Below are positions 8,941 through 43,055 of a stretch of 64,000 nucleotides of DNA, piece by piece; positions within the stretch are counted from its first letter, which is position 1, and each line of letters opens with the position of its first letter. The notes under the pieces are model-generated. The model saw only the letters and a list, made by a program, of their open reading frames with translations. It searched no databases and was not told where the DNA came from. The stretch covers positions 1 to 64,000 of IMG/VR virus record IMGVR_UViG_3300028392_000029. The stretch is one strand, 5' to 3'. A program made the translations under genes and the position numbers.

Positions 8941-9240
8941 TTATACGGGTATTCCCCATGTGCTTGAGGCATTTTCTCCCACACCAATCACACAGGCTGT
9001 GGCACTAGTGTACTCAATCAGAGTCCATGCGCCAGTTTTAAGATTCACAGTCAGCACAGTACGGGTGCCCGCAGTGGCGTTTGATCCCTGCCATTGCGGT
9101 GTTTCCCCAAATTCTTCCACTATGGCTTTGAACACAGTGACCGTAGCGTCGCAGGTCACAGGCTTGTTTAGAGTGCGTGGTTCTGCTGGTGCAGTGGTTA
9201 TCACACTGCATAACAATACAGTAGCTAAAAAGTTCTTCAT
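8941..9240 (-). CDS. hypothetical secreted protein
   Basis: Signal-peptide-like N-terminus; TAAATA just upstream. Confidence 0.65.
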   Translation of the reverse strand: MKNFLATVLLCSVITTAPAEPRTLNKPVTCDATVTVFKAIVEEFGETPQWQGSNATAGTRTVLTVNLKTGAWTLIEYTSATACVIGVGENASSTWGIPV

Positions 9241-9406
9241 ACGGTATTTATTCAGCTAAGTACATGATATGCGTACTCTATACACTCTCTCAGCTCTACT
9301 GCCATTAGACTACTCTGCGAGCTAAGTATTTTCACCATGGGGCGGCTGCTAAGTACTTGGCAAAAATTTTTTGCGCTGCCGGCTCCGCCGTTATCCTGAT
9401 ACCCTT

Positions 9407-9940
9407 ATGAACCTATCTCCCTTTATACGCGGCTACACTATCAACACTGATCTATGCGATCGGTTGGTCGCTGCCAGTGAGCGTATTGAGTTTACTTCAG
9501 GTCCCAAGGCCTATACACACTGCATGTTGGATCAGTTTGACCAGGATCTACGTGACAGTTATGTTCATGCACTGTTTGCCGCAGTAGAGCAGTACAAAGC
9601 AGAATTTCCCTGGTGCTATCGTGAGATCAATCGTTGGGGACTGTATCCCTTGATTAAACTACAGCGTTATAGTCCCGGACACTACTATGCTGAATGGCAC
9701 TGCGAAAATGGGGGAAACATGCACGGGGATAATCTCCTGCGGCACTTGGTATTCATGACCTACTTGACGGATTGTGAAGTTGGAGGCGGTACTGAGTTTC
9801 TCTATCAGGATCTACAGGTCCAACCCCAAAAAGGACTTACCTTGATATGGCCCGCAGATTGGACACATCATCACAGGGGTATTCCTGCTCCCACAGCGAC
9901 CAAGTTGATCGTTACAGGGTGGTTTACCTTTGCTCCCTAG
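9407..9940 (+). CDS. 2OG-Fe(II) oxygenase (prolyl-4-hydroxylase-like)
   Basis: WHCE, MTYLTD, GGGTEF, WPADWTHHHRG, KLIVTGW. Confidence 0.85.
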   Translation: MNLSPFIRGYTINTDLCDRLVAASERIEFTSGPKAYTHCMLDQFDQDLRDSYVHALFAAVEQYKAEFPWCYREINRWGLYPLIKLQRYSPGHYYAEWHCENGGNMHGDNLLRHLVFMTYLTDCEVGGGTEFLYQDLQVQPQKGLTLIWPADWTHHHRGIPAPTATKLIVTGWFTFAP

Positions 9941-9995
9941 TCTCGCTGTATAAATACACTTATAAAGAGCTTGAGCTCGATTATTGGAGAACATT

Positions 9996-10289
9996 ATGGC
10001 CGGAGTATTAGTAATTTTTAAACGTCAGCGTCAATCAGCTAGCGTACCTTGGTTCCAGCCTATCCCGGAATACAAAGAACAAGAGTTGGCCACTTTAAAG
10101 GGCTACGGCTCCGGGGTTGGAATAGAGTATTTGACCTATATAAGAACAGTGTATTTTGCCACCCTAGCTGACTACACAGAATGGGCCAATTCGCCTGCCG
10201 TTATAGCTCTATCTGAGGCACGCCGCAAATATCATGAGTCAGTGGGCATTGATGAATTCAAAGAAGTAGTTAGCCTAACAGTAGTATAA
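9996..10289 (+). CDS. hypothetical protein
   Basis: TATAAATA at 9949-9956 and GGAGAA RBS. Confidence 0.65.
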   Translation: MAGVLVIFKRQRQSASVPWFQPIPEYKEQELATLKGYGSGVGIEYLTYIRTVYFATLADYTEWANSPAVIALSEARRKYHESVGIDEFKEVVSLTVV

Positions 10290-10330
10290 TAATTTCGCAG
10301 TCACCCAGCCCAGCTGGTTAAATATCCATT

Positions 10331-11191
10331 ATGCAACTACTACCGATATACCCAGAATGGGCCACCCAAGTACAGGTCACTTGGGAAGAAGCCATGGCAG
10401 CAACTCCCGAATTCTGGAGTCAGCTGGTCTTAGACCGTAATCTTATAGTTATACAGGGCTTGGGCAATCAATTGGCCGACGCAGAGTTTTATCAACTAGG
10501 TCAAAAATTTGGCCGAGTGTGGGACCAAACAGACTACAAAAAGCCCGTGGTCAGCAACGGATTTGACCCCACCCTAGCCGACCGAACTGGTGCTACGCCT
10601 GTGAGCTATTTTAAAAGCAACAACAATCATTTTGGTGCTGGCTACATGGACTATCATGCTGACATGGTGCATATTGGAGCCAACTCATATCCCGGGCGAC
10701 TACTCTACATGGTCAACAACACCACTGATGGCTCGGGGCAGACTGCTTGGCTCAATCTAGAACTAGGTTGGAGTTTGCTCACTGATGAAGAACAGGCTCA
10801 GTACAGTGACTGCTGGATTTGGATGCACGACATGTACATACCGGAAACTAGAGTTGAACGCTTGCCCTTGCTCAAAACCAATCCCAAAACCGGACGAGTA
10901 AGCCCCACACTGAACTGCAACTATATGGGCCCACATACTCGGGCCTGGATCAATCATGTGGAACGCAATGGACAACAGCTGAGCTGGGCTGATTCTACCC
11001 AGTTTATCACTGAGCTGTATCAACTGCTAGAAAGCCGTGCCAATACTGTCTATTGGCACAATTGGACCCAAGGTGATATCATAGTCTACGACAATTGGTT
11101 CAATGTGCATAAACGACTAGCTGTGGTTGATGCCAGCACAGCAGATGGCCGAGGTCGACTGCTCAAACGCTTGACCTTTAACTTCCGTTAA
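10331..11191 (+). CDS. TauD/TfdA-family 2OG-Fe(II) dioxygenase
   Basis: YHAD motif, WTQGDIIVYDNWFNVHKR, RLLKRLT. Confidence 0.85.
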   Translation: MQLLPIYPEWATQVQVTWEEAMAATPEFWSQLVLDRNLIVIQGLGNQLADAEFYQLGQKFGRVWDQTDYKKPVVSNGFDPTLADRTGATPVSYFKSNNNHFGAGYMDYHADMVHIGANSYPGRLLYMVNNTTDGSGQTAWLNLELGWSLLTDEEQAQYSDCWIWMHDMYIPETRVERLPLLKTNPKTGRVSPTLNCNYMGPHTRAWINHVERNGQQLSWADSTQFITELYQLLESRANTVYWHNWTQGDIIVYDNWFNVHKRLAVVDASTADGRGRLLKRLTFNFR

Positions 11192-11841: not shown

Positions 11842-11842
11842 G

Positions 11843-12292: not shown

Positions 12293-12326
12293 GATTTATA
12301 TTAGTATTATATACGTACTTATCTAA

Positions 12327-12917: not shown

Positions 12918-14365
12918 AGTTCATCGCCGGGCAGATTGTTAAGTAATTCTCGTAGTTTACTACTGGCTACCTCGGCTTTGATTTTCGGCTTGCCTAGATC
13001 AAACCCTTCTTTAGGAGTAGCACGTTCCCAGCCAGTGCCAGCGGTATCTTCACTGACAGTTTGACGATTCTTAATTGAGTTTAGCAAGCTACTTCCAGCA
13101 CTTTGACTGTTGTGATTACCATAACCGTCTTCTTGCTCGCAGTCAGTAATACGCAGACTATCAATGTTAAACTCTAGATCAATCTTCATACCGACACCAC
13201 TAGATGAACGTGTCTTCATCAACTGAATTTGATAGCGTCCACGCTCACGCATAGCTCTACTGGTAAAGATGCCAAACACATTATCCGCAGTTTGAATCTT
13301 AGATAGTCCGCCTGAAATATGACTGTGATCAAACTCAACTTCTTCAACAGCACCGCGATTCAACTGCGCCGCAGTGACAAATACACAGTTCTTTTCCATG
13401 GCCAAGTTACGTAATTCTTCACTTACATACTTGTCCTTGACAAACAAGTTTTCTGCTGAAATCTTCTTGCCCATTGGCATCAACAAGTCCAGGTAGTCAA
13501 CCAATAGTACATCAACTTTACGTCCTAGTTTGATTTCATATTCTTTCAAATACGCACGGATATCATTTGTAGTTTTACCTGATGGCATATACTTGATCTG
13601 ATACGTGCCAGACTTCTTACCTACCATTTTGACCTTCATCTCAACGTCGTCTAAGTTCTTAAACACATCTTTAGTGGCCATTCCTGTTACCATAGCATCC
13701 ATACGCATGGCAACAAGTTCTTCACTAAGTTCTAAGGTTAAGTAGACTACATTCATACCTTTTTCTGCAAAGTTGATACCTAAGTTGGCTAGGAATAATG
13801 ACTTGCCTGCACCTGAGCCGCCAGCAAAAATGTTAAGTTCACCTCGGTTAAAACCACCAAACAGTTTATCATCAACACTTTTCCAACCAGTAGATACCTG
13901 TCCGTTTTTATCTTTGATCTTCATTAATCGAGCACGGGGATCCAACCAGTAATCTGTGCCTAGGTCACGTTGCAATCCTACTTGTACAGCCAATTTGATC
14001 TTTTCTTCTACACTGCCGTATTCACCTTTTTCAAGTAAGTCGGCACTTTCTAGAATGGCTTTTTCTAAGCCTTTATGTCGAATAAATGTTTCAAAATCAT
14101 TCAACAACCAATCAAAATGCTCATCACGCAAGTCATGGGGTACCTTAAGATTTGTACCAGTGGCAGCATTAATAATTTCTTCTGTGGGCACTACATTATG
14201 CTCTTCAATATACTGACTCATAAATTCAGCCGCAGTCTGTAGTTTACGGTCAAACAGAGTATGGTCAAAGATACCCTGACATCTGCTAAATGTAGCCGCG
14301 TCGGCTAGCATCATTTCTAAATATACTTTTTGTATATCGTATCCGTAATCTGTATTTTGTTTCAT
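12914..14365 (-). CDS. replicative DnaB-like helicase (T4 gp41-like)
   Basis: Walker A GGSGAGKS, TLELSE, VDYLDL, AQLNR, MKTR. Confidence 0.92.
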   Translation of the reverse strand: MKQNTDYGYDIQKVYLEMMLADAATFSRCQGIFDHTLFDRKLQTAAEFMSQYIEEHNVVPTEEIINAATGTNLKVPHDLRDEHFDWLLNDFETFIRHKGLEKAILESADLLEKGEYGSVEEKIKLAVQVGLQRDLGTDYWLDPRARLMKIKDKNGQVSTGWKSVDDKLFGGFNRGELNIFAGGSGAGKSLFLANLGINFAEKGMNVVYLTLELSEELVAMRMDAMVTGMATKDVFKNLDDVEMKVKMVGKKSGTYQIKYMPSGKTTNDIRAYLKEYEIKLGRKVDVLLVDYLDLLMPMGKKISAENLFVKDKYVSEELRNLAMEKNCVFVTAAQLNRGAVEEVEFDHSHISGGLSKIQTADNVFGIFTSRAMRERGRYQIQLMKTRSSSGVGMKIDLEFNIDSLRITDCEQEDGYGNHNSQSAGSSLLNSIKNRQTVSEDTAGTGWERATPKEGFDLGKPKIKAEVASSKLRELLNNLPGDEL

Positions 14366-14383
14366 AGTTGTATTATACGCTAG

Positions 14384-15325
14384 TTAGACTTTTATTTCAA
14401 TATGTTTGACAGGATCCCATCGATAATCCCATACTCGTTGTTTAGTGTGGTACAATACTGCACCGATACTTGAGCTAGGATCACCGGGATTGGGTAGGCT
14501 CCAGCGGTACTTGAATCTGGGCTCTACAAACTTTTTATTAGCGGTACTATTCATAGCACATCCGCCCATGTAAACCAAACTATCTGTATCAATCAGCTGT
14601 TTAGCTTTGAGCATAACAGCTGATACTTGATCTTCAAACACCTGTTGTACTGCGGCCGCAATGTCACATTGATCTTGCAAATTACCGATAGGATAAGGCC
14701 AATCTAAAACTCCCCTATGCAGGTTGCGAGTTAGTTTGACTGTGTAATCTATGTAACTCGTAACCTCAGTCAAATATCTTTTAGGATCACCTTGTTCACT
14801 CATTTGTTGTAGCAAATATTCTTGTTTGATAGGCTCTAGTCCTATTAACTTTGTGAACGCACTGTAAAATAATCCTAAGCTATGTGGATAACTTCGACTC
14901 CACACTTTGGTCATTTCACCGTGTAGCCCTTGCCATATGGAAGCACATTCAAATTCTCCGATCGCATCGAGCACAACAATCGCACAATGATTAAACGGAC
15001 TTGTATAATAGCCAGCGGCAGCATGACTAGCATGATGAGGAGTATAAGAAATGTTTGCATATTTGAATTGTCGCAGGTGATGTTTTGGTAATGTCGACAT
15101 GTCTAATGCTGTTGAATATTGTCCAGCATATACCTGTCTTGCTTTTTTGATCCACGGACGCTCGTACCAAAAAATGCGATCCGGACTTCCATAATTTAGT
15201 GCTGGAACAGTCTGACGACTTGATAGCTCGTCTTCTGCGCTAGTAGTCTGCGATATCAGTTTACCCTCTTTGAATACAGCAAGACTGGAGCCGTGATTAA
15301 GAGCGTTTATCCCCCAGTGTATCAT
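14384..15325 (-). CDS. carbamoyltransferase, N-terminal (Kae1-like) domain only
   Basis: WGINALNHGSS, HHASHAA, LDAIGE, SLGLFYS, GGCAMN, PGD. Confidence 0.8.
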   Translation of the reverse strand: MIHWGINALNHGSSLAVFKEGKLISQTTSAEDELSSRQTVPALNYGSPDRIFWYERPWIKKARQVYAGQYSTALDMSTLPKHHLRQFKYANISYTPHHASHAAAGYYTSPFNHCAIVVLDAIGEFECASIWQGLHGEMTKVWSRSYPHSLGLFYSAFTKLIGLEPIKQEYLLQQMSEQGDPKRYLTEVTSYIDYTVKLTRNLHRGVLDWPYPIGNLQDQCDIAAAVQQVFEDQVSAVMLKAKQLIDTDSLVYMGGCAMNSTANKKFVEPRFKYRWSLPNPGDPSSSIGAVLYHTKQRVWDYRWDPVKHIEIKV

Positions 15326-15435
15326 TTGTAGATAAATGGATCACGTTTCTGTAATTCTTTGATACGTTTTTTCCACTCACGATTTTCCTTCCATTTTCGC
15401 CAGGGGGTTAATAAAAAGTCTATTATTTTTTTCAT
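15322..15435 (-). CDS. 37-aa basic peptide (not in ORF track)
   Basis: MKKIIDFLLTPWRKWK...RDPFIYK*, overlaps both neighbours by ATGA. Confidence 0.6.
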   Translation of the reverse strand: MKKIIDFLLTPWRKWKENREWKKRIKELQKRDPFIYK

Positions 15436-16400
15436 GTTATGTCCTTAAACCATTTCTTCGCTCTTAATTGTATTTTGAGACTATTAGATTCTTTAGCATT
15501 AATAATTAACCATAAAGTAGCTAATCGTCCTAGCTTACATACTGCATCATTTACATCTTTAACACCGGCTGGCCAGTCCGGCATTGACACTGACCATCCG
15601 TATTCTACTGCTTGTTCTACAGTCTTAGGACCTTCGTGATCATAATCTGGAACAAGAATAATTTCTTTGCCTAACTGCTTGAGTAGCCAATTTTGACTGT
15701 CTTTGATCTCTGCTCCGAGTAAAGCACACCCATCAATACTTATCGCATCAAAAGGGCCTTCACACACAATTACGAAGTTGCGATCATTTGATTGCCTATC
15801 TAAATTAAACACATATCCCGGCTGTTGCTCACTGATATACTTAGGTTTAGTGTCGCCTATGGCCCGAGCTGTGTAGCCTACAATGACATTGTCCTTGAGG
15901 AACGGTATGATTACTCTGTTGCTAAACCCTATTTTCGGTGTCCAGTAAAACGGATAATCTTCGAGATATAAACTTCTGCTTGAAAGATATTCAAGTACAG
16001 GAATGAGCTTGTCCGGGATATGGTTCAAACTGGAAATAAGTTCGCTGTCTAATGGTAGCGCACGTTCTTCGAACTTAGGTATTATGCTTTGCACAACTGT
16101 GTTAGAGTTGTCGTTGAGTCGTAATGCTTCTAATCTAAGCTGGCTAATCGTATCGTCACTCATATTGAGCAACCGCATAAATTTACTCATCTTTTGACTA
16201 ATAGTTCTGCCAGGTTGCCAACTACATTTGAACTGACAATTGAAACAATGATAACTTACAGCATCACCGCCGTTGACGATAAATCCGCCACGTTGTCTTT
16301 TATCGTCACAACAGGGCGCATTAAAACTGACCCAGCCACTTGGAGTAGTTTTTCGTTTACCAGGTAAATGTGTAAGTAATGTTTCTGAAATTAGGCCCAT
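15432..16400 (-). CDS. DNA primase (T4 gp61-like)
   Basis: Zn-binding CC...CFNC; TOPRIM VCEGPFDA, PDYD, KDVND. Confidence 0.88.
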   Translation of the reverse strand: MGLISETLLTHLPGKRKTTPSGWVSFNAPCCDDKRQRGGFIVNGGDAVSYHCFNCQFKCSWQPGRTISQKMSKFMRLLNMSDDTISQLRLEALRLNDNSNTVVQSIIPKFEERALPLDSELISSLNHIPDKLIPVLEYLSSRSLYLEDYPFYWTPKIGFSNRVIIPFLKDNVIVGYTARAIGDTKPKYISEQQPGYVFNLDRQSNDRNFVIVCEGPFDAISIDGCALLGAEIKDSQNWLLKQLGKEIILVPDYDHEGPKTVEQAVEYGWSVSMPDWPAGVKDVNDAVCKLGRLATLWLIINAKESNSLKIQLRAKKWFKDIT

Positions 16401-16411
16401 GCCTAATTATA

Positions 16412-17284
16412 CTACGAAACAGTAAAAGATACAACCTTTCCGGGGCCATTAGTTGCGCCATAACCTCCATAAATATCCATATTTGAATAAATTGACGAAG
16501 TTAAGGGCCAGCCGTATGTTAATCGGAAATAGTTATAAGTTCCTACGGGAACGGTAACTGTAACTGTACTTTGGATTGAGGTTGGTGTGTTAGTTGCTTT
16601 GTTATCAAAAATTACAGTTTGTGCGGCATTTAACCAACTATTCACAGATATAGTCATATCAGAAGTGCTTTCTAAATAAATTTTACCTAGAAATCCTTTG
16701 CTGATAATCACTGCAAATGTTAGCTCAGTTGTTGGAACTGCTTCATAAAATTTAGCAGGAACTGCCGAACTATGATTCTGCACATTGCCGGCAAAATCAA
16801 TTTCACCGGTAAAGGTATCATACACTCTGTCATCTCTAAACGTCGGCATTGCATCGCCTACAAGTTCAATTTTACCAATAGCACCGAATCTACTGTCAGC
16901 ATATAACAATACATCTACACCATTTTTTAAAGCACTCACGCTGTAGGTAAGATACTGACTAGATAGCTCTGTCAAATCTTCTTGTGGAATAGTAACGCTG
17001 GCTAGACCCTTGCTAACCGTTTGATTTAGCGGAGTAATAGAGTAAGGACTGTTTGGTAAAGAATTACCCGCCATGTCCATTATATTAAGTTCTATCTGGG
17101 TTAGAGTTGCCAAGTCAATGCGTTTCTGGTCGGCATTCTTAATGTCGAACTCTAAGGTATTATCAATACCGTTATATATTTTTACAGTTCTCTGATACAC
17201 GATTGTATACTCCGTTGTGAATCCTGCCAGATCAGCTATTAGAGTGATTCGATTTGGATATAAATAACTTGAAATTTTTTGCAT
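16412..17284 (-). CDS. hypothetical (probable virion) protein
   Basis: Long beta-rich ORF; TAAATA upstream. Confidence 0.65.
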   Translation of the reverse strand: MQKISSYLYPNRITLIADLAGFTTEYTIVYQRTVKIYNGIDNTLEFDIKNADQKRIDLATLTQIELNIMDMAGNSLPNSPYSITPLNQTVSKGLASVTIPQEDLTELSSQYLTYSVSALKNGVDVLLYADSRFGAIGKIELVGDAMPTFRDDRVYDTFTGEIDFAGNVQNHSSAVPAKFYEAVPTTELTFAVIISKGFLGKIYLESTSDMTISVNSWLNAAQTVIFDNKATNTPTSIQSTVTVTVPVGTYNYFRLTYGWPLTSSIYSNMDIYGGYGATNGPGKVVSFTVS

Positions 17285-17309
17285 CTGGCAGGACCTTTAT
17301 ACTATATTT

Positions 17310-17684
17310 ATGGCAAAACTAAGAGACAACATCGAACAAAATCTACCCTTTATCAGTGTGTTAAACTACGGTGATAATGAATATGTGGGAATCATAATAA
17401 ATCAAGATCAGTTTGTTACCAGCTTCTACGATTTAAACGCTATCAAAACTCCAGAAGAAAAAACACTTTTTTTAGAAATAGGTGAAATTTGGTGGTGGGA
17501 AAGTAATCGACAATTTCCTATTAATATATTTTGTAGGGATCAAATAGGACCATTTGCCTATGCTATTAAAACATTTAATAGCAAGGATACTAGAGTAATA
17601 TTGGGACCTGTAGTTAATTTGATGAATCTTACTCTTAAGCGTGTTAAACGCAAAAGTGTTCAGCTAGTCCGTAGAGTTCGCTAA
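17310..17684 (+). CDS. conserved hypothetical protein
   Basis: ORF with WWWESNR motif. Confidence 0.65.
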   Translation: MAKLRDNIEQNLPFISVLNYGDNEYVGIIINQDQFVTSFYDLNAIKTPEEKTLFLEIGEIWWWESNRQFPINIFCRDQIGPFAYAIKTFNSKDTRVILGPVVNLMNLTLKRVKRKSVQLVRRVR

Positions 17685-20322: not shown

Positions 20323-20331
20323 GATAAATCC

Positions 20332-20838: not shown

Positions 20839-20844
20839 AATTCC

Positions 20845-22311: not shown

Positions 22312-23504
22312 TTTACAATTATCTTATGTTCAAGTAGTGCGGGTTGTTCTGCGTATTCAACTATCAAATCACAGCAATTGGTATACACTGAAGTTTTGCC
22401 GTGTCGCATACCCATGCGTGTATCGACAGCAATAACACTCATAGGCTTCCAGGGGTTTTTTAGGAAAAATTTCGGTATTTTTCCACCTAACAATGAAGCA
22501 ACTTTTGTGTCAACATCTAATGGATAATTGTACTGCTTGGATGAAATAAATGAATTGAATTTTTTGCCAGCGTCGTCGTTTGGTAGTCGAAAATAAATTC
22601 CTACGTGATCAAAAATACCATTATTTTCCAACGCTTCCGACAAAATTTCGATATTTTCTTGGAATTTTGAAGTAGCATTTGGATCAAACACAACTAGTAG
22701 CGGCAGTCGTTTTAATTGTACCAATGCCTTGATGACATCAGTCAGTGTATGCTGTTTTTGATCAACCCACACTCTAGGAGTTGATCTATTAGCCAAATAC
22801 TCTACCAAATTTTCGCCTGGATTTTTCACATTTTCTGTGAAATATTGATAACGCATACTTCGATCGTTTATGACGTTTTGATCAAGTGCTGTTTCAATGC
22901 CAAGGTCGGCTGTGATAGCCCTATGAAAGTTTGGATATTCAATATTGGTCAATAACATCCGATTACGGATCTCAGTTTCTGACCAAGATTTTATGGTATT
23001 GTAGTGGTTTTCTATGGAATCTGAAATTTCAAAGTTTAGTGGAGTCAACAAGTCGGTCAACATTACAATGTTTTTTTCAGTTAGGTCTGCATGGTAGTAT
23101 TTTCCGGGAGACAACTGTATTAAGTTATCAACCGTCTTAGTTGCATCCAGCAAAATCTTCCGAATTTTACCAGAAGCAGTTACTTCTAGCTGTAATACTA
23201 ACTCATCTTCGGAATTTTTGACAATACTAAATTTTAGCACTTGTTCGATATGTCGAAATGGTCTAGACCATGTTGGAGATTCTAATACTTCGTAAATACT
23301 GTTATCAATAGTTGACAATTTTTCTTTATTATCTTTAAGAATTTTTAATAATAGATTAGATTGCGATTCTGTTATGAACTGATAACCAGTCATCGACGTC
23401 GCTAGGCTATTTAATACTCTTATGTCTCGTTTTGAAATCAAAGTATCAATGGCTGGATTAGAAAAATTTATAATTTGTAATAGAAGATTATCAACAGTTA
23501 TCAT
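22302..23504 (-). CDS. hypothetical protein
   Basis: 400-aa ORF; likely start MITVD just after promoter. Confidence 0.7.
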   Translation of the reverse strand: MITVDNLLLQIINFSNPAIDTLISKRDIRVLNSLATSMTGYQFITESQSNLLLKILKDNKEKLSTIDNSIYEVLESPTWSRPFRHIEQVLKFSIVKNSEDELVLQLEVTASGKIRKILLDATKTVDNLIQLSPGKYYHADLTEKNIVMLTDLLTPLNFEISDSIENHYNTIKSWSETEIRNRMLLTNIEYPNFHRAITADLGIETALDQNVINDRSMRYQYFTENVKNPGENLVEYLANRSTPRVWVDQKQHTLTDVIKALVQLKRLPLLVVFDPNATSKFQENIEILSEALENNGIFDHVGIYFRLPNDDAGKKFNSFISSKQYNYPLDVDTKVASLLGGKIPKFFLKNPWKPMSVIAVDTRMGMRHGKTSVYTNCCDLIVEYAEQPALLEHKIIVKWP

Positions 23505-23510
23505 AAAGTA

Positions 23511-23539
23511 AGTATACACTAATTTGTTCCATAGATCAA
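23511..23539 (-). promoter_or_regulatory. sigma70-type promoter
   Basis: TTGATC-N17-TATACT on minus strand. Confidence 0.65.
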
Positions 23540-30419: not shown

Positions 30420-30429
30420 ACTATATTTA

Positions 30430-32025
30430 TTAGATATTACTAGAAATAAATATCGGGAGTGGAGCTTCCCAATCTTCATCTAGATGTGAATTTATGCTGA
30501 GAGTTTCAAACACTCTAGGATCCCACTCTGCTAGTACTACACTCATGCGTACAACTAGCAATAACGCAGAAACTAAGTCATCATGCTGTCCTGTTTTTGC
30601 TTTAAAACTGGTGCCTGCCGCAATAAAACTTTTAAGCTCACTGAGTAAAGGACGACTGTGAATTTTCATCTTATCTTCCTCAATTAAGAACTTTACTCTG
30701 GCGCATGCTGATATTTTATTACCAAATGTAGTGTTAAATCCTTTACGGAATTTACGTACATGCCCTTTTCTCACCGGTTCACTTACAAATAATCCGGGGA
30801 AGTTTTCTTCTCCTAAATCCTTAATCACTACTAGAGCCGCTTCGCCCACAGTGTTGTTTTCACAACTCCAGTAGATACTGTTAGGGTATTCTTGTCCAAT
30901 TTCGTCTTGAATATAGCGCAATAAATCTCTAAATATTTTGACTTGATCTTGTATAATTGTTAAGTTGTGTTGCCATTCTGCTACCTGTATCATGCTGGGT
31001 AATTCAAACACTTCTATGGCAGCATAGTCACCACCTGTGCCTAGGCTAGGATCTAGGGCCGCGGCATAGAGTAATCCGGGTTGAGGTTTTTTATACCAGC
31101 GCACTTGCCCCATACGGAATGCTGGTTCTTTACCCACAAGTTCTGCAAGTTTAATACTGTTAATTAGTGTTTCGTCAAATACTAAAAACTCGCAACCGTA
31201 CTCACGACGGAAACGTTCTTCACCAATACGACCCATCTCAGTTCGCTTCCATTCTTCATCACGATCCGGATGTTCGTGCCATTCAGCACGGAATCCGTGG
31301 AATCCGTTGCGTCCTATACCTTCTTGATTTTCGTTGCCGAACTCATCAAAAAGATCTTTGCTTTCTTTCCAAATAATAGCAAACGTATCTTCGTCACTAT
31401 TAGGAGTTGAAGTGATAATTGCTCGTCCACCAGTTGCTAGTGTTGGTGATATTGAAGTCCAAAATTCTTCAGCAATGTTAGGTTGTACGAAAGCAAACTC
31501 ATCGCAATATAGTAAGGATATGGACATACCACGACCGGTGTTACCAGTAGTAGTAGCTGAAACAATTCTTGATCCGTTCTCAAATTCAATACTCCCTTTG
31601 TTATAGTTAACCACACCTGCACGTATGTAGTCTGGGCATAGTTCGTATCCATAGCGAATACGTTGCATGATTTCTTGTGAGCCTGTATATTTGTGCGCGG
31701 CCACTAGGATAGTTTGATCCGGATGAAACATGGCATACCACAACAAGTATGCTGATGCACAAGTTGTTTTACCACTTTGTCGTGGCAACATGTTTATGTT
31801 GAATCGATAATCGTGATAAGAATTTAATAACCCTACTTGATAGTCATACGGCTGAAACAGCATCTTGCCTTTAACAGGATGCTGAATATAAAAGAAGGTT
31901 TTAGCAAAGTGCAGATACCCTGTAGTAGGATCTGAGCAGGCTAATAAGTGCTGAACTTGTTCTTCAGTAAATGATTCTTTGGTGTGCGCTTTTTTGGTTA
32001 AGACGCCGTCTAGTGATTTTGCCAT
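30430..32025 (-). CDS. terL: terminase large subunit (gp17-like)
   Basis: PRQSGKT, LYCDEFAF, ITSTPN, ALDPS, HDDLV motifs. Confidence 0.93.
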   Translation of the reverse strand: MAKSLDGVLTKKAHTKESFTEEQVQHLLACSDPTTGYLHFAKTFFYIQHPVKGKMLFQPYDYQVGLLNSYHDYRFNINMLPRQSGKTTCASAYLLWYAMFHPDQTILVAAHKYTGSQEIMQRIRYGYELCPDYIRAGVVNYNKGSIEFENGSRIVSATTTGNTGRGMSISLLYCDEFAFVQPNIAEEFWTSISPTLATGGRAIITSTPNSDEDTFAIIWKESKDLFDEFGNENQEGIGRNGFHGFRAEWHEHPDRDEEWKRTEMGRIGEERFRREYGCEFLVFDETLINSIKLAELVGKEPAFRMGQVRWYKKPQPGLLYAAALDPSLGTGGDYAAIEVFELPSMIQVAEWQHNLTIIQDQVKIFRDLLRYIQDEIGQEYPNSIYWSCENNTVGEAALVVIKDLGEENFPGLFVSEPVRKGHVRKFRKGFNTTFGNKISACARVKFLIEEDKMKIHSRPLLSELKSFIAAGTSFKAKTGQHDDLVSALLLVVRMSVVLAEWDPRVFETLSINSHLDEDWEAPLPIFISSNI

Positions 32026-32039
32026 ATGTTTATTTAATC

Positions 32040-32067
32040 AAAAAAATAGACCCCGGAGGGTCTATTT
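32040..32067 (-). terminator. intrinsic terminator
   Basis: AATAGACCC-TCCG-GGGTCTATT-TTTTT on minus strand. Confidence 0.8.
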
Positions 32068-32081
32068 GGCAAATTTAACCT

Positions 32082-33358: not shown

Positions 33359-33379
33359 AGTGAATTCCTGATGTAGTAT

Positions 33380-33868
33380 TTATTTTAAATTCTTCAATTT
33401 TTCCAACAAGCTATTACGATCAGTAATAATAACCCCGTCTCCGTGTATGTTAACACTGTCATCTACACCAGCCGCTTCTTGATCTAATTTTTGTTTCTTA
33501 AGCTGTAAATCAATCATTTTTAGCTTTTTATCTAATTTGGCAGTTTTAGCTGTAATAGCATTGCCTAGCATACTAGCGGCTACTTCGAACAAACGACCAC
33601 TATATCTAGCTTCAACATTCATACCTAGATCCATGATGTCATCGTAGGCATCTACAGCTTTTTTAGCCAACTCGTCTAGCTCAGAATCTGCTAAATCCCC
33701 TAGTCCTTTAACAGCTGGTAAGGCAGCGGCGATTTTATCAAATTCACTGATATCGCGCAATAACGGTTGTGCTTGAGCAACCATTTCTTTTTTCTTCTTT
33801 TTTTCTTCTTGCTTGATAACTTCTTTGCTAGAAGGAAGATTTAGTAATTCTTCAAGTTTCTTGGTCAT
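33380..33868 (-). CDS. possible terminase small subunit
   Basis: Helical; GRLFEVAASML resembles the PRAYEV motif of T4-like TerS; near TerL. Confidence 0.5.
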   Translation of the reverse strand: MTKKLEELLNLPSSKEVIKQEEKKKKKEMVAQAQPLLRDISEFDKIAAALPAVKGLGDLADSELDELAKKAVDAYDDIMDLGMNVEARYSGRLFEVAASMLGNAITAKTAKLDKKLKMIDLQLKKQKLDQEAAGVDDSVNIHGDGVIITDRNSLLEKLKNLK

Positions 33869-33882
33869 AACACTACTTATGC

Positions 33883-34311: not shown

Positions 34312-34312
34312 G

Positions 34313-34684: not shown

Positions 34685-34685
34685 A

Positions 34686-35678
34686 TTATGCTCCTAGTTT
34701 TGTAGGTGTAGCTACTGTTGTATTCGTAGCATTATTTGCCACCGGAAACACTACACCCGGTACTCCGCCTATAGTTTGCGGTAAGACCCCTCTTGACAAA
34801 CCGACAGTGCCAGCCTGGGGAGGAACTTTTGAGTTCTGATACCTATTTACGCTATTGATTGCATTATTAAGGGTCGACACTGCTACACTAGTCGAATTTA
34901 GATTATCAACAAAACTTGGATGTATAGTAGTAGGGTCGGGATTAATACCCTGTAGCGGTGACGGATTCACATCATAATGTTCTATACCAAATCCTTCGGG
35001 TGCTCCGGCTGAAACTACACCATTGCCATACGTTACAGTTTCGTAGGCAAGTTGCATGGTAAAATCATGTGTAGTAGATTTAGCATAATCTAAATTGTTG
35101 CCATTCCAAGTTTTGATTATGGGGTTGATTAATTTAATACTGATATACTCATGTCGAGCCATCTGATAAATTGTAATATAATTAAAAAAGGGGTTTGTAC
35201 TTTTATTATCTAAGCCATACGGTGTGGTAATAAAATTACTGCTTCGAGTGGCGTTTCTATTGTAAGCGCCTGCTTGTGTTGCACTGGTTGGGTCGGCATA
35301 ATAATACGTGTAATAATTCTGCCATAGTTGATTAATCAACCCCATGTTGTCGTCGTGAAATGCAATGGTAACGTCTTCAGCATTGATGTGGGTTTGTATA
35401 TTCTTTTTTCTATTGTACTGATTAGCAGAATCAAGAGTAACTGTAAATTTAGGTAATGTTACATTCTTAACCAACATATTAATTTCGTTAGAGTATCGTT
35501 GCGCAAGTTCGGCATTTTTCAATGCGGCTTTGTTAATACTGAACGCTACATGGAACTGAAAGTCAAATTTAGGTGCCAGCCTAAACTGATTATCAGAAAA
35601 CATCCTGGCGGCATGTTGCCAGTCACGTAGATTGGTTGTAGTGTTGCTAGTTAGATTGTTGTTTGCAGTAAAGGCCAT
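34686..35678 (-). CDS. tail-tube-like / baseplate tube initiator protein
   Basis: Tube-fold pattern (LVKNVTLP, YNRK, FHDD, LDY..FTMQLAYE); follows tube gene. Confidence 0.6.
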   Translation of the reverse strand: MAFTANNNLTSNTTTNLRDWQHAARMFSDNQFRLAPKFDFQFHVAFSINKAALKNAELAQRYSNEINMLVKNVTLPKFTVTLDSANQYNRKKNIQTHINAEDVTIAFHDDNMGLINQLWQNYYTYYYADPTSATQAGAYNRNATRSSNFITTPYGLDNKSTNPFFNYITIYQMARHEYISIKLINPIIKTWNGNNLDYAKSTTHDFTMQLAYETVTYGNGVVSAGAPEGFGIEHYDVNPSPLQGINPDPTTIHPSFVDNLNSTSVAVSTLNNAINSVNRYQNSKVPPQAGTVGLSRGVLPQTIGGVPGVVFPVANNATNTTVATPTKLGA

Positions 35679-35727
35679 AACAATATTTATTAAAAAAATA
35701 AACTACGCATATTATGAATACCTATAA

Positions 35728-35752
35728 TAAAACCCACCGAAGTGGGTTTATT
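35728..35752 (-). terminator. intrinsic terminator after tail tube gene
   Basis: AAACCCAC-TTCG-GTGGGTTT(TA) on minus strand. Confidence 0.75.
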
Positions 35753-35753
35753 A

Positions 35754-36377: not shown

Positions 36378-36391
36378 TTAATATCTCCTAA

Positions 36392-39688: not shown

Positions 39689-39794
39689 ATTTTTATCTCC
39701 AATGAGTACATGTTCTTGTATGTATTTAGTGGTTTTGGATAATTTGTGGCTATAATAGCCTATCAAAAAGGTTCTAAAAAGGCTTAAATATAAT

Positions 39795-40121
39795 ATGAGA
39801 CCTTTATGTTCTTGCGGAAGAGCACCTGTTGCTATAAACTACTATAAAAATAAAAAAGCATTCTATCGAAGCCAGTGCGGGTCGTGTAGCCGCGGTGTAA
39901 AACTACCAAGGTGGTACTCTAGCGGATATCGTCCTAAATCCGCTTGCGATAAATGTGGATTTAAATCGCCTCACACTGAAGTATTCTCAGTGTTTCATGT
40001 AGACGGTGATTTAAATAATTGTAGACTGACTAATTTAAAAACAGTGTGTTCTAACTGTGCTCGTGTTCTACATAAGGAAGGGATTCGCTGGCGGCAAGGG
40101 GATCTTGTACCAGACCTTTAA
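39795..40121 (+). CDS. small Zn-binding HNH-like protein
   Basis: CDKCGF, HVDGDLNN, NLKTVCSNC. Confidence 0.7.
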   Translation: MRPLCSCGRAPVAINYYKNKKAFYRSQCGSCSRGVKLPRWYSSGYRPKSACDKCGFKSPHTEVFSVFHVDGDLNNCRLTNLKTVCSNCARVLHKEGIRWRQGDLVPDL

Positions 40122-40731: not shown

Positions 40732-40752
40732 AGAGCCCCCTAAGTTAGCTCT

Positions 40753-40781
40753 AGTATATAACAGTTTTATTACAAGGTCAA
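40753..40781 (-). promoter_or_regulatory. sigma70-type promoter for dNMP kinase
   Basis: TTGACC-N17-TATACT. Confidence 0.7.
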
Positions 40782-40788
40782 ATTATTT

Positions 40789-41577
40789 TTAACCGATTAC
40801 AAAATAATAGCCTGTACCGCCGGCTGTTAAATCGATAATTTCTTTATCAAGTGCCGCCATTTCTTCTTTAGCTTCAGAAATTAGAGCTGTACCGTTTAGT
40901 GTAATTGGTGATCCCGGGCCGGCGATCGACCCAAATTTAGAGCGTGCTTGCCCTAGAATTTGTTTGCATACTGCAAGTGAATAATTTCTTAACCACTGTT
41001 TAGCATAGGTATCTTGTAGTAGTACCCAATCTGGGCGATAATTATAACTCTGTATCAATATTTGCTCGCCTTGGGCAAACGGTCGCTGTAGCACATTTAA
41101 AATGTGAGTGGTAGGTTTCCAACTAAATTCTATATAGCTACCAAACATTTTACCTACTAGTTTTTGATACCCAGCAAACATGTCGTAGGTTGCTAGGCCA
41201 CCCATCATACTGCCTGACATCATGTAGGTGTTTGTGTAGGCTAAGTTAAACGGCTCAAATAACGTGCCGCCTGCACCCATACCAGTTCTTGAGCCAATAG
41301 CTCTACGAAACACTTGACGCACTGTGATAATTTCATCAGGTAATCTGTATTCATTTTGGTCCTGTATAAGTTCTAAAAAGCTGTAACTTTCTTCCACAGC
41401 ATTGCTACTACGCTGACGATAATGCGTAAGAGCTCGATCTAGTGCTAGTTCGTAGTGCGCAGGATCTAACTCAATATCAACCATGCCGTCGCCTAGCATT
41501 AGTTTAATAAACTCGAATACTTTATTACGCTCTATAGTAGAGTTGCTTTGGGTAGTTGATGGTAGGGAATCTGACAT
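40789..41577 (-). CDS. neck protein (gp13-like)
   Basis: LGDGMVDIEL, WLRNYSLA..K..LGQARSKF, LNG. Confidence 0.8.
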   Translation of the reverse strand: MSDSLPSTTQSNSTIERNKVFEFIKLMLGDGMVDIELDPAHYELALDRALTHYRQRSSNAVEESYSFLELIQDQNEYRLPDEIITVRQVFRRAIGSRTGMGAGGTLFEPFNLAYTNTYMMSGSMMGGLATYDMFAGYQKLVGKMFGSYIEFSWKPTTHILNVLQRPFAQGEQILIQSYNYRPDWVLLQDTYAKQWLRNYSLAVCKQILGQARSKFGSIAGPGSPITLNGTALISEAKEEMAALDKEIIDLTAGGTGYYFVIG

Positions 41578-41621
41578 TTTTTGTTCTCCTAGTATATTTA
41601 GCTATCGATAAATATGTTACT

Positions 41622-43055
41622 ATGCCAAGACTATCTCTCTATAAACCAGAAAAAGGTAACGACTATAAATTTATAGATCGTACAGCTTCAGAAATGTTCC
41701 AGGCTGGCGGAACAGATGTATATTTGCACAAATATCTAGGGCCTACGATTAAAACTTCGGGCACTGCGGATCAGCCGGTTTATGGCGCACTAAGTCCTAC
41801 TAATATACAAGACCTATTATTTTTAGAAAATCGTGATAGAAAATACGATACAGAGATTTATCGATTACGCGGTATGTATAATGTTGCAAATATTGACTTC
41901 AATCTAAGCCAATTTGGGTTATTCATTGATAATGATACCATATATATGACTGTACATATTAACGATATCATCAATACTATTGGTAGAAAACCAATAAGTG
42001 GGGACGTTTTTGAACTGCCGCATTTGCGTGATGACTTTGCTCTTAATGATTTTGATATAAGTCTGCCTCGATACTATGTTATTGAAGATGTGGGCCGGGC
42101 TAGTGAAGGATTCTCAGTAACTTGGTTTCCACATTTATATAGATTAAAATGTAAAAAAGTAGTAGACAGTCAACAGTTTGCTGATATACTAAGCAAGCCG
42201 GCTCTTGATGCCAATGGCGATCCGATGGCAAACACTAGTTTGCGAGATTTAATTAGTACACATAATAAAGAATTGCAAATTAATGATAGTGTTGTTGCGC
42301 AAGCAGAAGCCGATGCTCCTAAAAGTGGATACGAATCTAGACAATTTTGGACCATGGCTGTTGATCCTCAAGGTAAGCCAGTTATACAGACTGCCGACGA
42401 AACAACAATCGATGCCAGTACTAGTAGTATTCTTGCAAGTGATGTTAACGGAGTTCCTGTTAGAGCTGGCTATAGCGGATATCTACTAGGAGACGGTTAT
42501 CCTGTCAACGGGCACGAATTTGGTCACGGTATACAATTTCCAAGTGCTCCGGCACAAAATGATTTTTTCCTGCGTACAGATTTTATGCCAAACAGATTAT
42601 TCCGATTTGATAACTCAAAGTGGCTCATGGTTGAAGATGCTGTTAGAATGAATATGACTAACAATGATACCAGAAGCACATTAAAAACTGGATTCATTAA
42701 TAATACATATTATACCTACAATGAAGAAGTTGGATCTGATATTATAACACTTGCTAGTGGAGATACTGTTATCAATACTGAAATTAATTATATTACTTCA
42801 TCGTATATTGTACTAAAACAAGCGCCGACATTAATTGCATACACTGTTGCTGATTATCCAAGTATGATTAGTTCGTATAATTATACAAGCCCGATAGGTG
42901 TAATGTCAGCCAAGGTTAGAATAACATTACCTGTGGTAAATGGTGTGCAACAAACTGTTCCAGTCGGCGGTGTATGGACTATTAGTTTGTACAACTATAG
43001 GGAATCACAACGACAGAGTTTATCAGAGGCTCTTAAACCAAAGGCGGATTTCTAA
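41622..43055 (+). CDS. neck protein (gp14-like) with C-terminal extension
   Basis: DLLFLENRDR, LSQFGLF, GDVFELPH; lies between gp13 and gp15. Confidence 0.7.
   Translation: MPRLSLYKPEKGNDYKFIDRTASEMFQAGGTDVYLHKYLGPTIKTSGTADQPVYGALSPTNIQDLLFLENRDRKYDTEIYRLRGMYNVANIDFNLSQFGLFIDNDTIYMTVHINDIINTIGRKPISGDVFELPHLRDDFALNDFDISLPRYYVIEDVGRASEGFSVTWFPHLYRLKCKKVVDSQQFADILSKPALDANGDPMANTSLRDLISTHNKELQINDSVVAQAEADAPKSGYESRQFWTMAVDPQGKPVIQTADETTIDASTSSILASDVNGVPVRAGYSGYLLGDGYPVNGHEFGHGIQFPSAPAQNDFFLRTDFMPNRLFRFDNSKWLMVEDAVRMNMTNNDTRSTLKTGFINNTYYTYNEEVGSDIITLASGDTVINTEINYITSSYIVLKQAPTLIAYTVADYPSMISSYNYTSPIGVMSAKVRITLPVVNGVQQTVPVGGVWTISLYNYRESQRQSLSEALKPKADF

What the first reader, a model, noticed from the sequence alone, without database searches (positions are those of the whole stretch)
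9240..41622. Many middle/late genes appear leaderless: -10 element only 4-7 nt before ATG
Seen: TAAATA/TAAGTA lies 4-7 nt upstream of the start codon, with no room for an SD, for genes starting at 9240, 10331, 30419, 32025 (TerL), 33868, 35678, 39795 and 41622. TATAAT/TATACT lies 5-6 nt upstream of helicase (14365), primase (16400) and 23504. Established: transcription starts about 5-7 nt downstream of a -10 box. Inference: these mRNAs begin at or next to the AUG and would be immune to any anti-SD shut-off, which fits the sRNA model.
Basis: partly seen in the sequence, partly recalled or inferred. Interest (0 to 1): 0.6.

Follow-up and report, generated by a model that had tools for sequence, protein, structure and literature searches.

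The report
Promoters fused to start codons
In this uncultured freshwater giant phage and hundreds of its relatives, about one gene in ten (including the DNA-packaging enzyme, a tail tube protein, the helicase and the primase) has its promoter placed so close to the ATG that the mRNA should begin at the start codon, a known but uncommon way of making protein without a ribosome-binding site.

Summary
All 11 claimed sites are in the sequence. I added two in the window, 4855 (strong) and 17310 (weak), and six more in the rest of the 223-kb contig.

There are two promoter types. One is a T4-like late box, (A)TAAATA; the phage encodes a gp55-type late sigma factor. The other is a sigma-70 type, TTGnnn-17-TATAAT. 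Each occurs in two geometries: far from the ATG with a Shine-Dalgarno (SD) sequence between, or 4-5 nt (late) and 5-7 nt (sigma-70) from the ATG with no SD.

The short distances equal the known box-to-start-site distances, so the A of the ATG falls at or next to +1.

About 240 related metagenomic loci give the strongest evidence. The box and its distance to the ATG are kept across 30-60 distinct orthologues per gene, while the spacer sequence varies. TerL also has a conserved, covarying terminator ending 3 nt before the box. T4 and PA5oct lack this geometry.

No transcription start site data could be obtained, because only metatranscriptome contigs were available. Leaderless expression is therefore well supported but inferred.

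Most late genes keep an SD, and the candidate sRNA matches only the early-gene SD.

The parts
4820..4857 (+). TTGACA-17-TATAAT-N6-ATG in front of gene 4855-5340 (161 aa, phrog_2650). A full-consensus sigma-70 promoter abutting the start, inside the early gene cluster.
9238..9250 (-). TAAATA-N4-ATG in front of gene 8941-9240 (99 aa, unknown function).
   Evidence: All 3 orthologue sequences (68-100% aa identity) keep (A/T)TAAATA-N4-ATG.
10319..10333 (+). TAAATA-N6-ATG in front of gene 10331-11191 (286 aa, unknown function). Weakest case: no informative orthologue, and a TATAAT lies 40 nt upstream.
14363..14400 (-). TTGAAA-17-TATAAT-N6-ATG in front of the DnaB-like helicase gene 12914-14365.
   Evidence: In 32 of 45 distinct ATG-aligned orthologues a -10-like hexamer lies 5-7 nt before the ATG. 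In further relatives with a different N-terminal extension, an ATG still sits 5 nt after TATAAT.
16398..16434 (-). TTGTAT-17-TATAAT-N5-ATG in front of the Toprim primase gene 15432-16400.
   Evidence: In 50 of 60 distinct orthologues the -10 box lies 5-7 nt before the ATG; some distant ones have a roughly 25-nt leader.
17298..17312 (+). TATACT-N6-ATG in front of gene 17310-17684 (124 aa). Weak candidate: no good -35, and its ATG overlaps the minus-strand late box of the divergent gene 16412-17284.
23502..23539 (-). TTGATC-17-TATACT-N6-ATG in front of gene 22302-23504 (400 aa, unknown function), just after a terminator-like GGCCTATTTTTTT.
   Evidence: In 26 of 34 orthologues the -10 box lies 6-7 nt before the ATG.
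30417..30429 (-). (A)TAAATA-N4-ATG in front of gene 27516-30419 (967 aa, virion structural protein). The box overlaps the stop-codon region of TerL.
   Evidence: In 61-63 distinct orthologues (42-100% aa identity) ATAAATA is 100% conserved and always 4 nt from the ATG. In-frame stops upstream of the ATG in 30 of 64 rule out the longer ORF.
32023..32036 (-). TAAATA-N5-ATG in front of the large terminase gene 30430-32025.
   Evidence: In 59 of 62 distinct orthologues the distance is 4 or 5 nt, with 19 different spacer sequences. The 3 exceptions carry an SD.
32044..32067 (-). Intrinsic terminator hairpin (10 bp, then 7 T) that ends 3 nt before the TerL late box. It leaves about 14 nt between the T-run and the ATG.
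   Evidence: It is conserved in 60 distinct relatives with 27 different stem arms, mean dG -14.6 kcal/mol and mean z -4.1.
33866..33879 (-). TAAGTA-N5-ATG in front of gene 33380-33868 (162 aa, weak resemblance to the small terminase subunit).
   Evidence: ATAAGTA-N4/5-ATG is found in all 46 ATG-aligned distinct orthologues, and the G variant itself is conserved.
35676..35689 (-). (A)TAAATA-N5-ATG in front of gene 34686-35678 (330 aa, tail tube protein family).
   Evidence: The distance is 4 or 5 nt in all 55 ATG-aligned orthologues (the 12 scored as d=9 are overlapping-match artefacts). The ATG is the first possible start in 57 of 57.
39785..39797 (+). TTAAATA-N4-ATG in front of gene 39795-40121 (108 aa, HNH-like), divergent from the tail sheath gene.
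   Evidence: The distance is 4 or 5 nt in 31 distinct orthologues.
41609..41624 (+). GATAAATA-N7-ATG in front of gene 41622-43055 (477 aa, virion structural protein). It sits back to back with the SD-led late promoter of gene 40789-41577(-) in a 44-nt intergenic region.
   Evidence: The distance is 4-5 nt in 26 and 7-8 nt in 8 of 34 distinct orthologues.
41578..41600 (-). Comparison case, an SD-led late gene: TAAATA-N17 (containing AGGAG)-ATG in front of gene 40789-41577. This is the usual late geometry in this phage.

Best explanation
The window is the first 64 kb of a 223-kb contig of an uncultured freshwater jumbo myovirus. Its closest cultured relative is Pseudomonas phage PA5oct (TerL 54% identical).

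The phage uses two promoter types. One is a host sigma-70 type, TTGnnn-17-TATAAT. The other is a T4-like late type, (A)TAAATA, presumably read by the phage's own gp55-like late sigma factor.

For most genes the promoter lies upstream of a short leader that carries an SD. For about one gene in ten the -10 element sits exactly one box-to-start-site distance before the ATG: 5-7 nt for TATAAT and 4-5 nt for TAAATA. Transcription should then start at, or within 0-2 nt of, the A of the AUG. The resulting leaderless mRNA would be translated by recognition of the 5'-terminal AUG, without an SD.

Shown here: the motifs, their spacing, the absence of an SD, the correctness of the start codons, the presence of the late sigma gene, and strong purifying selection on box and distance across the clade.

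Inferred: that the boxes fire as promoters, where the start site lies, and the mode of translation.
For: 1. The same two motifs occur in a promoter-typical position before other genes. TAAATA lies 17-23 nt before the ATG with an SD between in 16 genes. TATAAT with TTGACA lies 27-34 nt before early genes with the SD AGGAGCGA. ATAAATA is 37-fold enriched in -40..-1.

2. A gp55-type late sigma gene lies at contig positions 106897-107724(-). It matches phrog_12791 at E 1e-70 and T4 gp55 by tblastn at E 2e-6, and it sits next to gp46/gp47 homologues as in T4. The late-box leaderless genes have late functions: TerL, tail tube and virion proteins.

3. The spacing matches the known geometry. The T4 late box occupies -13 to -6 (PMC1524935), so 5 intervening nt put the A at +1. 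A sigma-70 -10 box at -12..-7 needs 6 nt (established knowledge). The observed modes are 5 and 6 nt.

4. Comparative evidence. Across about 240 related IMG/VR loci, the box and its distance to the ATG are kept in 30-60 distinct orthologues per gene while the spacer sequence varies, with 7-28 different spacers per gene. For gene 30419, ATAAATA is invariant in 63 sequences while neighbouring positions vary. In the clade-wide histogram, TAAATA to the first ATG gives 100 cases at d=4, 140 at d=5, none at d=10-11 and only 2-3 each at d=12-15, then a second mode at 16-22 nt that carries an SD.

5. TerL has a covarying intrinsic terminator that ends 3 nt before the box. The promoter must therefore lie in the last ~14 nt before the ATG. 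It is also kept in a relative at 72% identity.

6. When the distance grows, an SD appears. This is seen in TerL of L073, L027 and L058. Conversely, PA5oct gp262, which weakly resembles (tblastn E 0.002) and shares primase-adjacent position with the SD-led gene 16412-17284, has TATAAATA-N5-ATG.

7. The adjacent ATG is the first possible start after an in-frame stop in most orthologues. Downstream SD-led alternatives are absent, and every candidate except one doubtful case outside the window (contig 145895, TTG) starts with ATG.

8. None of the 15 candidates at first-start positions has an SD core, against 88 of 181 other genes (Fisher P 1.5e-4).
Against: No start site was measured. The only RNA data were low-coverage assembled metatranscriptome contigs, which cannot show 5' ends.

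One such contig (35649-35956) reaches 30 nt into gene 35678 from upstream. Read-through transcripts or DNA carry-over may therefore exist there.

Several candidates follow an upstream gene without a terminator (30419, 33868, 35678). They will probably also be present on polycistronic RNA, where the AUG is internal.

With d=4, the T4 rule places +1 on the T of the ATG, so a 1-nt shift of the start site has to be assumed.

A gp45 clamp and gp33 were not identified.

The host is unknown, so its ability to translate leaderless mRNA is unknown.

The related loci are homologous, so their counts are not independent events.
Confidence: 0.8

Rival explanations
1. The genes are translated from longer, read-through or polycistronic transcripts. 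Initiation would be SD-independent: termination-reinitiation coupling with the upstream gene, or S1-dependent loading on an A/U-rich unstructured region. On this view the conserved A/T-rich box acts as a translational element or as an internal promoter of little consequence.
For: Genes 30419, 33868 and 35678 follow an upstream gene closely with no terminator. The TerL stop lies 8-10 nt before the 30419 ATG. An RNA-library contig runs from the upstream gene to 30 nt inside gene 35678. Some distant primase orthologues have a roughly 25-nt leader with no SD, so SD-independent internal initiation may exist in the clade.
Against: TerL and gene 23504 sit directly behind conserved terminators. Helicase, primase, 4855 and 23504 carry complete -35/17/-10 promoters. 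The box is the same sequence that marks SD-led late genes at promoter distance. A translational enhancer would not need the exact 4-5 or 5-7 nt spacings, which differ by promoter type just as start-site distances do. Divergent gene pairs such as 41577/41622 have no upstream gene to couple to.
Confidence: 0.1
2. The AU-rich motif is an RNA-level processing site, for example for an RNase E-like or phage endonuclease. Cleavage would trim longer transcripts to near-leaderless forms. The mRNAs would then be leaderless but processed rather than primary.
For: AUAAAUA is A/U-rich and single-stranded in character. Phage endonucleases that cut at defined mRNA motifs are known, for example T4 RegB (own knowledge).
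Against: This does not explain the sigma-70 class with correctly spaced -35 elements. It does not explain the identity of the box with the T4 late promoter consensus or the presence of a gp55 homologue. It does not explain TerL, where a terminator precedes the box.
Confidence: 0.05
3. It is a chance co-occurrence in AT-rich upstream DNA, or the start codons are mis-assigned and the true starts are downstream with an SD.
For: In the single genome the raw pattern TAAATA-N4-5-ATG is no commoner than its reversed control (12 versus 16). The late class alone beats shuffles only at P=0.03. My gene calls are home-made.
Against: 6 or 7 of the 12 pattern matches open full-length conserved genes. Orthologue conservation of box and distance is near total. 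There are no downstream SD-led starts, and in-frame stops lie upstream. tblastn alignments reach residue 1, and TerL codon 4 switches between TCA and AGT, both serine, which shows it is translated.
Confidence: 0.03

Closest known systems
Leaderless middle and late genes of Thermus phage phiYS40 (Sevostyanova et al. 2007, cited in PMC12340547; its content is recalled from my own knowledge because the paper was not held), and the '-10 region adjacent to ORF' expression mode of Deinococcus-Thermus (PMC12340547)
   Same: A -10 element lies a few nt before the ATG with no SD, the promoter-to-ATG distance matters, and a sizeable set of genes is affected. In the phage case these are non-early genes.
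   Different: Here the late class uses a T4-type box with no -35, read by a gp55-like sigma factor. Leaderless and SD-led genes coexist within the same promoter class. The phage belongs to a different lineage (PA5oct/Rak2-like jumbo myoviruses from lakes), and the host is unknown.
T4 late transcription (TATAAATA box, gp55/gp33/gp45)
   Same: The box sequence is shared, there is no -35 conservation, it is used for structural and packaging genes, and a gp55 homologue is encoded next to gp46/gp47 homologues.
   Different: In T4 no TAAATA lies 4-6 nt before the first ATG of an ORF of at least 80 codons (0 of 225); the mode is 22-29 nt. Here 8 of 179 do. The leading T of the box is not conserved. 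The clamp and gp33 were not identified.
Pseudomonas phage PA5oct (Arenbergviridae), the closest cultured relative
   Same: Related TerL (54% identity), the same GATAAATA-type boxes before late genes, and sigma-70-type TATAAT(A)/TTGAC promoters reported from RNA-seq.
   Different: PA5oct late genes are SD-led and its TerL has an SD-like leader. Only 1 of 611 TAAATA motifs has the leaderless geometry; this is gp262, a virion protein. Leaderless mRNAs are not mentioned in the paper.
Classical single leaderless phage genes (lambda cI from PRM; own knowledge, and cited in PMC12340547)
   Same: A 5'-terminal AUG, no SD, and a promoter abutting the start codon.
   Different: Those are isolated regulatory genes. 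Here it is a conserved set of about 19 genes that includes abundant virion proteins and replication enzymes.

Membership tests
Leaderless mRNA genes (promoter -10 element adjacent to the start codon) | A -10 element lies at one start-site distance (about 5-7 nt) upstream of the start codon. | tested here: met
   TATAAT at 5-7 nt and TAAATA at 4-5 nt, with modes at 6 and 5 nt.
Leaderless mRNA genes (promoter -10 element adjacent to the start codon) | No Shine-Dalgarno sequence, and no room for one. | tested here: met
   0 of 15 candidates has an SD core, against 88 of 181 other genes; no SD among the clade-wide cases at d=4-6.
Leaderless mRNA genes (promoter -10 element adjacent to the start codon) | The start codon is AUG and it is the true start. 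| tested here: met
   ATG in the aligned orthologues, first possible start after an in-frame stop in most, and no SD-led downstream alternative.
Leaderless mRNA genes (promoter -10 element adjacent to the start codon) | The primary transcript's 5' end lies at, or within a few nt of, the AUG. | tested here: inconclusive
   only assembled contigs from three lake metatranscriptomes were available, and they carry no 5'-end information.
Leaderless mRNA genes (promoter -10 element adjacent to the start codon) | Translation from the 5'-terminal AUG (70S or IF2-dependent, SD-independent). | not testable with these tools
   Needs a reporter, toeprinting or Ribo-seq in the unknown host.
T4-type late transcription system | A TATAAATA-like box at -13..-6 without -35 conservation, upstream of late genes. 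| tested here: met
   (A)TAAATA is enriched before structural and packaging genes. In TerL a terminator hairpin occupies the -35 position.
T4-type late transcription system | A gp55-family late sigma factor is encoded. | tested here: met
   phrog_12791 at E 1e-70 and phrog_234 at E 8e-25; tblastn against T4 gp55 at E 2e-6.
T4-type late transcription system | A gp45 sliding clamp acts as activator. | tested here: inconclusive
   No hit by tblastn or by Pfam PF02916/PF09116. A 251-aa ORF beside the clamp loader matches phrog_7084 of unknown function. Its single-sequence model was unusable, with pLDDT 32. The contig is only about 60% of the genome.
T4-type late transcription system | A gp33 co-activator is encoded. 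| not tested
   No query for this small, fast-evolving protein was run.

The most novel reading that the evidence does not exclude
The split between SD-led and leaderless genes could be a regulatory device rather than mere compaction. Late in infection the phage might change the translation apparatus or the pool of SD-bearing mRNAs. Possible means are the conserved anti-SD-like sRNA at 8206-8366, or a nuclease acting on SD or anti-SD sequences. A fixed subset (TerL, a tail tube protein, virion proteins, helicase, primase) would then be translated by a separate, SD-independent route with its own timing or stoichiometry.
Probability: 0.1. Interest if true: 0.8.

Novelty: new member of a known kind. 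Interest (0 to 1): 0.5.

Why it matters
Leaderless mRNAs are thought to be rare and weakly translated in most SD-using bacteria. The literature I could search reports no T4-type late promoters fused to start codons.

Here a large, abundant lake phage clade (more than 590 IMG/VR relatives) keeps this arrangement under clear purifying selection. The genes involved are essential and in part abundant.

Three things follow.
- The arrangement gives a clean natural data set on how far a -10 box may sit from an AUG: 4-5 versus 5-7 nt, according to sigma type.
- It warns that gene callers which rely on an SD will mis-start these genes. Three of the 11 sites lie inside longer mechanical ORFs.
- It suggests that the unknown host translates leaderless mRNA well, or that the phage helps it to do so.

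Tried and rejected
- Near-identity search against cultured phages found nothing.
- RNA evidence was uninformative. Coverage was patchy and there was no 5'-end information. No contig crosses the TerL or 30419 starts, but a hole proves nothing.
- RNAalifold on a MAFFT alignment of the TerL upstream regions gave no structure, because the hairpins were aligned out of register. I folded each sequence separately instead.
- Host inference failed. TerL relatives sit in MAG bins labelled Polynucleobacter, Flavobacteriales and Zixibacteria. These are mutually inconsistent and probably reflect binning carry-over.
- The gp45 clamp was not found by tblastn or by two Pfam models. A single-sequence fold of the candidate beside the clamp loader failed, with pLDDT 32.
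- The raw pattern count TAAATA-N4-5-ATG against its reversed control shows no excess in this genome, PA5oct or T4. The signal appears only when one asks which matches open real genes.
- The phiYS40 paper and the T4 genome review were not held.
- Rfam found only the tRNA.
Another (79) had wrong coordinates and was corrected.

Full report
**What the window is.** The window is the first 64 kb of a 223,176-bp linear IMG/VR virus record that CheckV estimates to be about 60% complete. It encodes a T4-type large terminase, a tail sheath, a gp15-like sheath stabiliser, a DnaB-like helicase, a Toprim primase and several giant ORFs. It has no near-identical cultured relative. By TerL the closest isolates are the Pseudomonas jumbo phage PA5oct group (54% identity), followed by Rak2-like phages. 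I made my own gene calls with a codon-usage model (196 genes) and listed every upstream region.

**The observation.** All 11 sites are as described.
- TAAATA or TAAGTA ends 4-7 nt before the ATG at 9240, 10331, 30419, 32025, 33868, 35678, 39795 and 41622.
- TATAAT or TATACT ends 5-6 nt before the ATG at 14365, 16400 and 23504.
- The same scan added 4855 (TTGACA-17-TATAAT-N6-ATG) and, weakly, 17310.
- Beyond the window it added starts at contig positions 105893, 139809, 145895 (a doubtful TTG start), 161565, 165532 and 214058.
- None of these genes has an SD core, against 88 of 181 other genes (Fisher P 1.5e-4).

**What the motifs are.** Three upstream architectures are visible.
- Early genes on the plus strand of the first 8 kb have TTGACA-17-TATAAT followed by a 27-34-nt leader ending in AGGAGCGA.
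- Structural genes typically have (G/A)TAAATA(C/T) 17-23 nt before the ATG, with GGAG or AGGA between.
- A third group has one of these same two boxes abutting the ATG.

ATAAATA is 37-fold enriched in the 40 nt before genes. It is the T4 late consensus TATAAATA without its poorly conserved first T (PMC1524935; PMC2988020). The contig encodes a gp55-type late sigma factor at 106897-107724(-). It matches phrog_12791 at E 1e-70 and lies next to gp46/gp47 homologues, as in T4. The genes with the late box at the ATG have late functions: TerL, a tail tube protein, two virion structural proteins and an HNH protein. The four strong sigma-70-type cases all have TTGnnn exactly 17 nt upstream of the -10 box. 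The boxes are therefore promoters, not merely A/T-rich DNA.

**Is the short spacing more than chance?**
- At 4-7 nt before called starts, the 20 commonest hexamers are all SD fragments except TATAAT and TAAATA.
- The distance distributions are multimodal. For TAAATA the groups are 4-7 nt, none at 8-12 nt, and 17-23 nt. For TATAAT they are 5-8 nt, 13-19 nt and 27-34 nt.
- An annotation-free test asked for the first ATG of an ORF of at least 80 codons. It found 8 of 179 TAAATA motifs at 4-6 nt in this contig, 1 of 611 in PA5oct and 0 of 225 in T4.
- Shuffling gives 7 versus 1.3 expected for TATAAT/TATACT (P<0.0005) and 6 versus 2.3 for the late box (P=0.03).
- The bare pattern count is not above its reversed control. 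What is unusual is that half of the matches open real genes.

**Comparative evidence.** Three scans of IMG/VR returned 569-597 confirmed relatives each, of which I kept 240 loci. For each gene I took the orthologues whose tblastn alignment reaches the N-terminus and read the upstream DNA.
- Gene 30419: 61 distinct sequences at 42-100% amino-acid identity, all GATAAATA-N4-ATG. ATAAATA is invariant while neighbouring positions vary between 30% and 94%.
- TerL: 59 of 62 have TAAATA-N4/5-ATG, with 19 different spacers.
- Gene 33868: all 46 ATG-aligned orthologues have ATAAGTA-N4/5-ATG, and the G variant itself is conserved.
- Gene 35678: all 55 are at N4/5.
- Gene 39795: all 31 are at N4/5.
- Gene 41622: 26 at N4/5 and 8 at N7/8.
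- Helicase: 32 of 45 are at N5-7. In relatives with a different N-terminal extension, the new ATG still sits 5 nt after TATAAT.
- Primase: 50 of 60 are at N5-7.
- Gene 23504: 26 of 34 are at N6/7.

Pooled over the clade, TAAATA to the first ATG gives 100 cases at d=4 and 140 at d=5. There are none at d=10-11 and only 2-3 each at d=12-15. A second mode at 16-22 nt carries an SD. The loci are homologous, so these are not independent events. The many different spacer sequences at constant length nevertheless show selection on distance.

**TerL is the clearest case.** A strong intrinsic terminator (10-bp stem, 7 T) ends 3 nt before the box. In 60 distinct relatives the hairpin is kept with 27 different stem arms, a mean dG of -14.6 kcal/mol and a mean z of -4.1. 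It is also present in a relative at 72% identity found in a MAG bin. Transcripts from upstream should stop there, and only about 14 nt remain before the ATG. Any TerL promoter must therefore place its start at the ATG. A gp55-type promoter needs no -35 element, which fits the hairpin occupying that position. In the three TerL orthologues that break the pattern, an SD is present: AAGGAG in L027 and L058, and TAAATA moved to 25 nt with AAGGAA in L073. The reverse flip is also seen. PA5oct gp262 is a mass-spectrometry-verified virion protein that weakly resembles (tblastn E 0.002), and shares primase-adjacent position with, the SD-led gene 16412-17284. It has TATAAATA-N5-ATG at its annotated start.

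**Start codons.** In most orthologues the ATG beside the box is the first possible start after an in-frame stop: 57 of 57 for 35678, 62 of 62 for primase, 62 of 66 for TerL and 30 of 64 for 30419. The last figure rules out the longer mechanical ORF. Downstream in-frame starts with an SD are essentially absent. TerL codon 4 alternates between TCA and AGT, both serine, so it is read as protein.

**Mechanism.** The T4 late box lies at -13 to -6, which leaves five nt before +1. A sigma-70 -10 box at -12 to -7 leaves six (established knowledge). The observed modes are five and six. The A of the ATG is thus at +1, or within one or two nt of it, and the mRNAs are leaderless. They should be translated by recognition of the 5'-terminal AUG. 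Compaction probably contributes. At 41577/41622 and at contig 214058/214101, two late promoters sit back to back in intergenic regions of 44 and 42 nt, with one gene SD-led and the other leaderless. I put 0.8 on this explanation. The promoter activity, the start site and the mode of translation remain inferred.

**What argues against it.** No start-site data could be obtained. The three lake metatranscriptomes are held as low-coverage contigs. One contig runs from the upstream gene to 30 nt inside gene 35678. Genes 30419, 33868 and 35678 have no terminator before them, so they are probably also carried on polycistronic RNA where coupling could operate. With d=4 the start must shift by one nt from the T4 rule. 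The clamp and gp33 were not identified, and the host is unresolved.

There is a plausible sRNA at 8206-8366(+). It forms two hairpins whose loops read GAUUCGCUCCCGG, followed by a terminator. It is conserved in at least 24 related loci with different stems. Its loops are complementary to GGAGCGAA, the extended SD found in seven early leaders and one other site. Late SDs such as TAAGGAG or AGGA lack the CGAA extension, and most late genes keep an SD. Leaderlessness is therefore not needed to escape this sRNA. In addition, the leaderless set mixes sigma-70-type and late-type genes. I found no evidence for a general anti-SD shut-off.

**Novelty.** Leaderless genes with the -10 box next to the ORF are known. 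Examples are lambda cI, the middle and late genes of Thermus phage phiYS40, Deinococcus-Thermus generally (PMC12340547) and mycobacteria. Searches found no report of leaderless late genes in gp55-type phages or in the PA5oct group. phiKZ and AR9 were reported to have no leaderless phage transcripts. This is a new, well-conserved member of a known kind. Its unusual combination is a T4-type late promoter with no -35 element fused to the AUG of essential and abundant late genes.

Noticed in passing
window 8206-8366 (+): Candidate small RNA directly after the early gene cluster. It has two hairpins whose loops both read GAUUCGCUCCCGG, the second being a terminator hairpin followed by a T-run. The loops are complementary to GGAGCGAA, the extended SD of seven early leaders. 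It is conserved in at least 24 related loci with different stem sequences. The fold z-score of the whole region is only -1.3.
   Followed up: partly
window 377-7341 (+); also contig 183104 (-) and 220192 (-): A repeated early expression cassette: TTGACA-17-TATAAT, then a 27-34-nt CA-rich leader (ACTTAAACAACA...) ending in AGGAGCGAA, then the ATG. AGGAGCGA occurs 7 times in the first 7.4 kb and once elsewhere.
   Followed up: partly
window 41578-41621; contig 214059-214100: Back-to-back divergent late promoters packed into intergenic regions of 44 and 42 nt. In each pair one gene is SD-led (box 17-19 nt from the ATG) and the other has the box 5-7 nt from the ATG.
   Followed up: partly
L027, L058 and L073 (TerL upstream); L163, L151 and L146 (primase upstream): Lineage-specific switches of the same gene between the leaderless geometry and a leader. 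TerL gains AAGGAG or AAGGAA when the box is moved or absent. Distant primase orthologues have a roughly 25-nt leader with no visible SD.
   Followed up: partly
PA5oct NC_071039 144974-144987 (locus L276): PA5oct gp262 is a virion protein seen by mass spectrometry. It has TATAAATA-N5-ATG at its annotated start, making it a candidate leaderless late gene in a cultured phage with published RNA-seq. It weakly resembles window gene 16412-17284 (tblastn E 0.002), which is SD-led.
   Followed up: partly
window 17284-17312: The ATG of gene 17310 (+) is embedded in the minus-strand late box (CCATAAATA) of the divergent gene 16412-17284. The conservation of this stretch may therefore serve the other strand.
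   Followed up: no
contig 65929-78057, 78112-84000, 117119-131863, 201039-212843; window 44979-51656: Very large ORFs of 4042, 1962, 4914, 3934 and 2225 aa. The 2225-aa one has no Pfam match.
   Followed up: no
L272, L273, L274: Contigs with TerL relatives (72%, 48% and 80% identity) sit in MAG bins labelled Polynucleobacter, Zixibacteria and Flavobacteriales. The labels are inconsistent and probably reflect binning carry-over, so the host stays unknown.
   Followed up: partly
window 4426-4502 (+): A tRNA-Met (CAT) gene lies inside the early region. A mechanical ORF (4469-4816, TTG start) overlaps it and is probably mis-started.
   Followed up: no
window 1-8000 versus 12000-64000: A compositional step. 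The early plus-strand region is about 47-49% G+C with positive GC and AT skew. The rest is 36-42% G+C.
   Followed up: no
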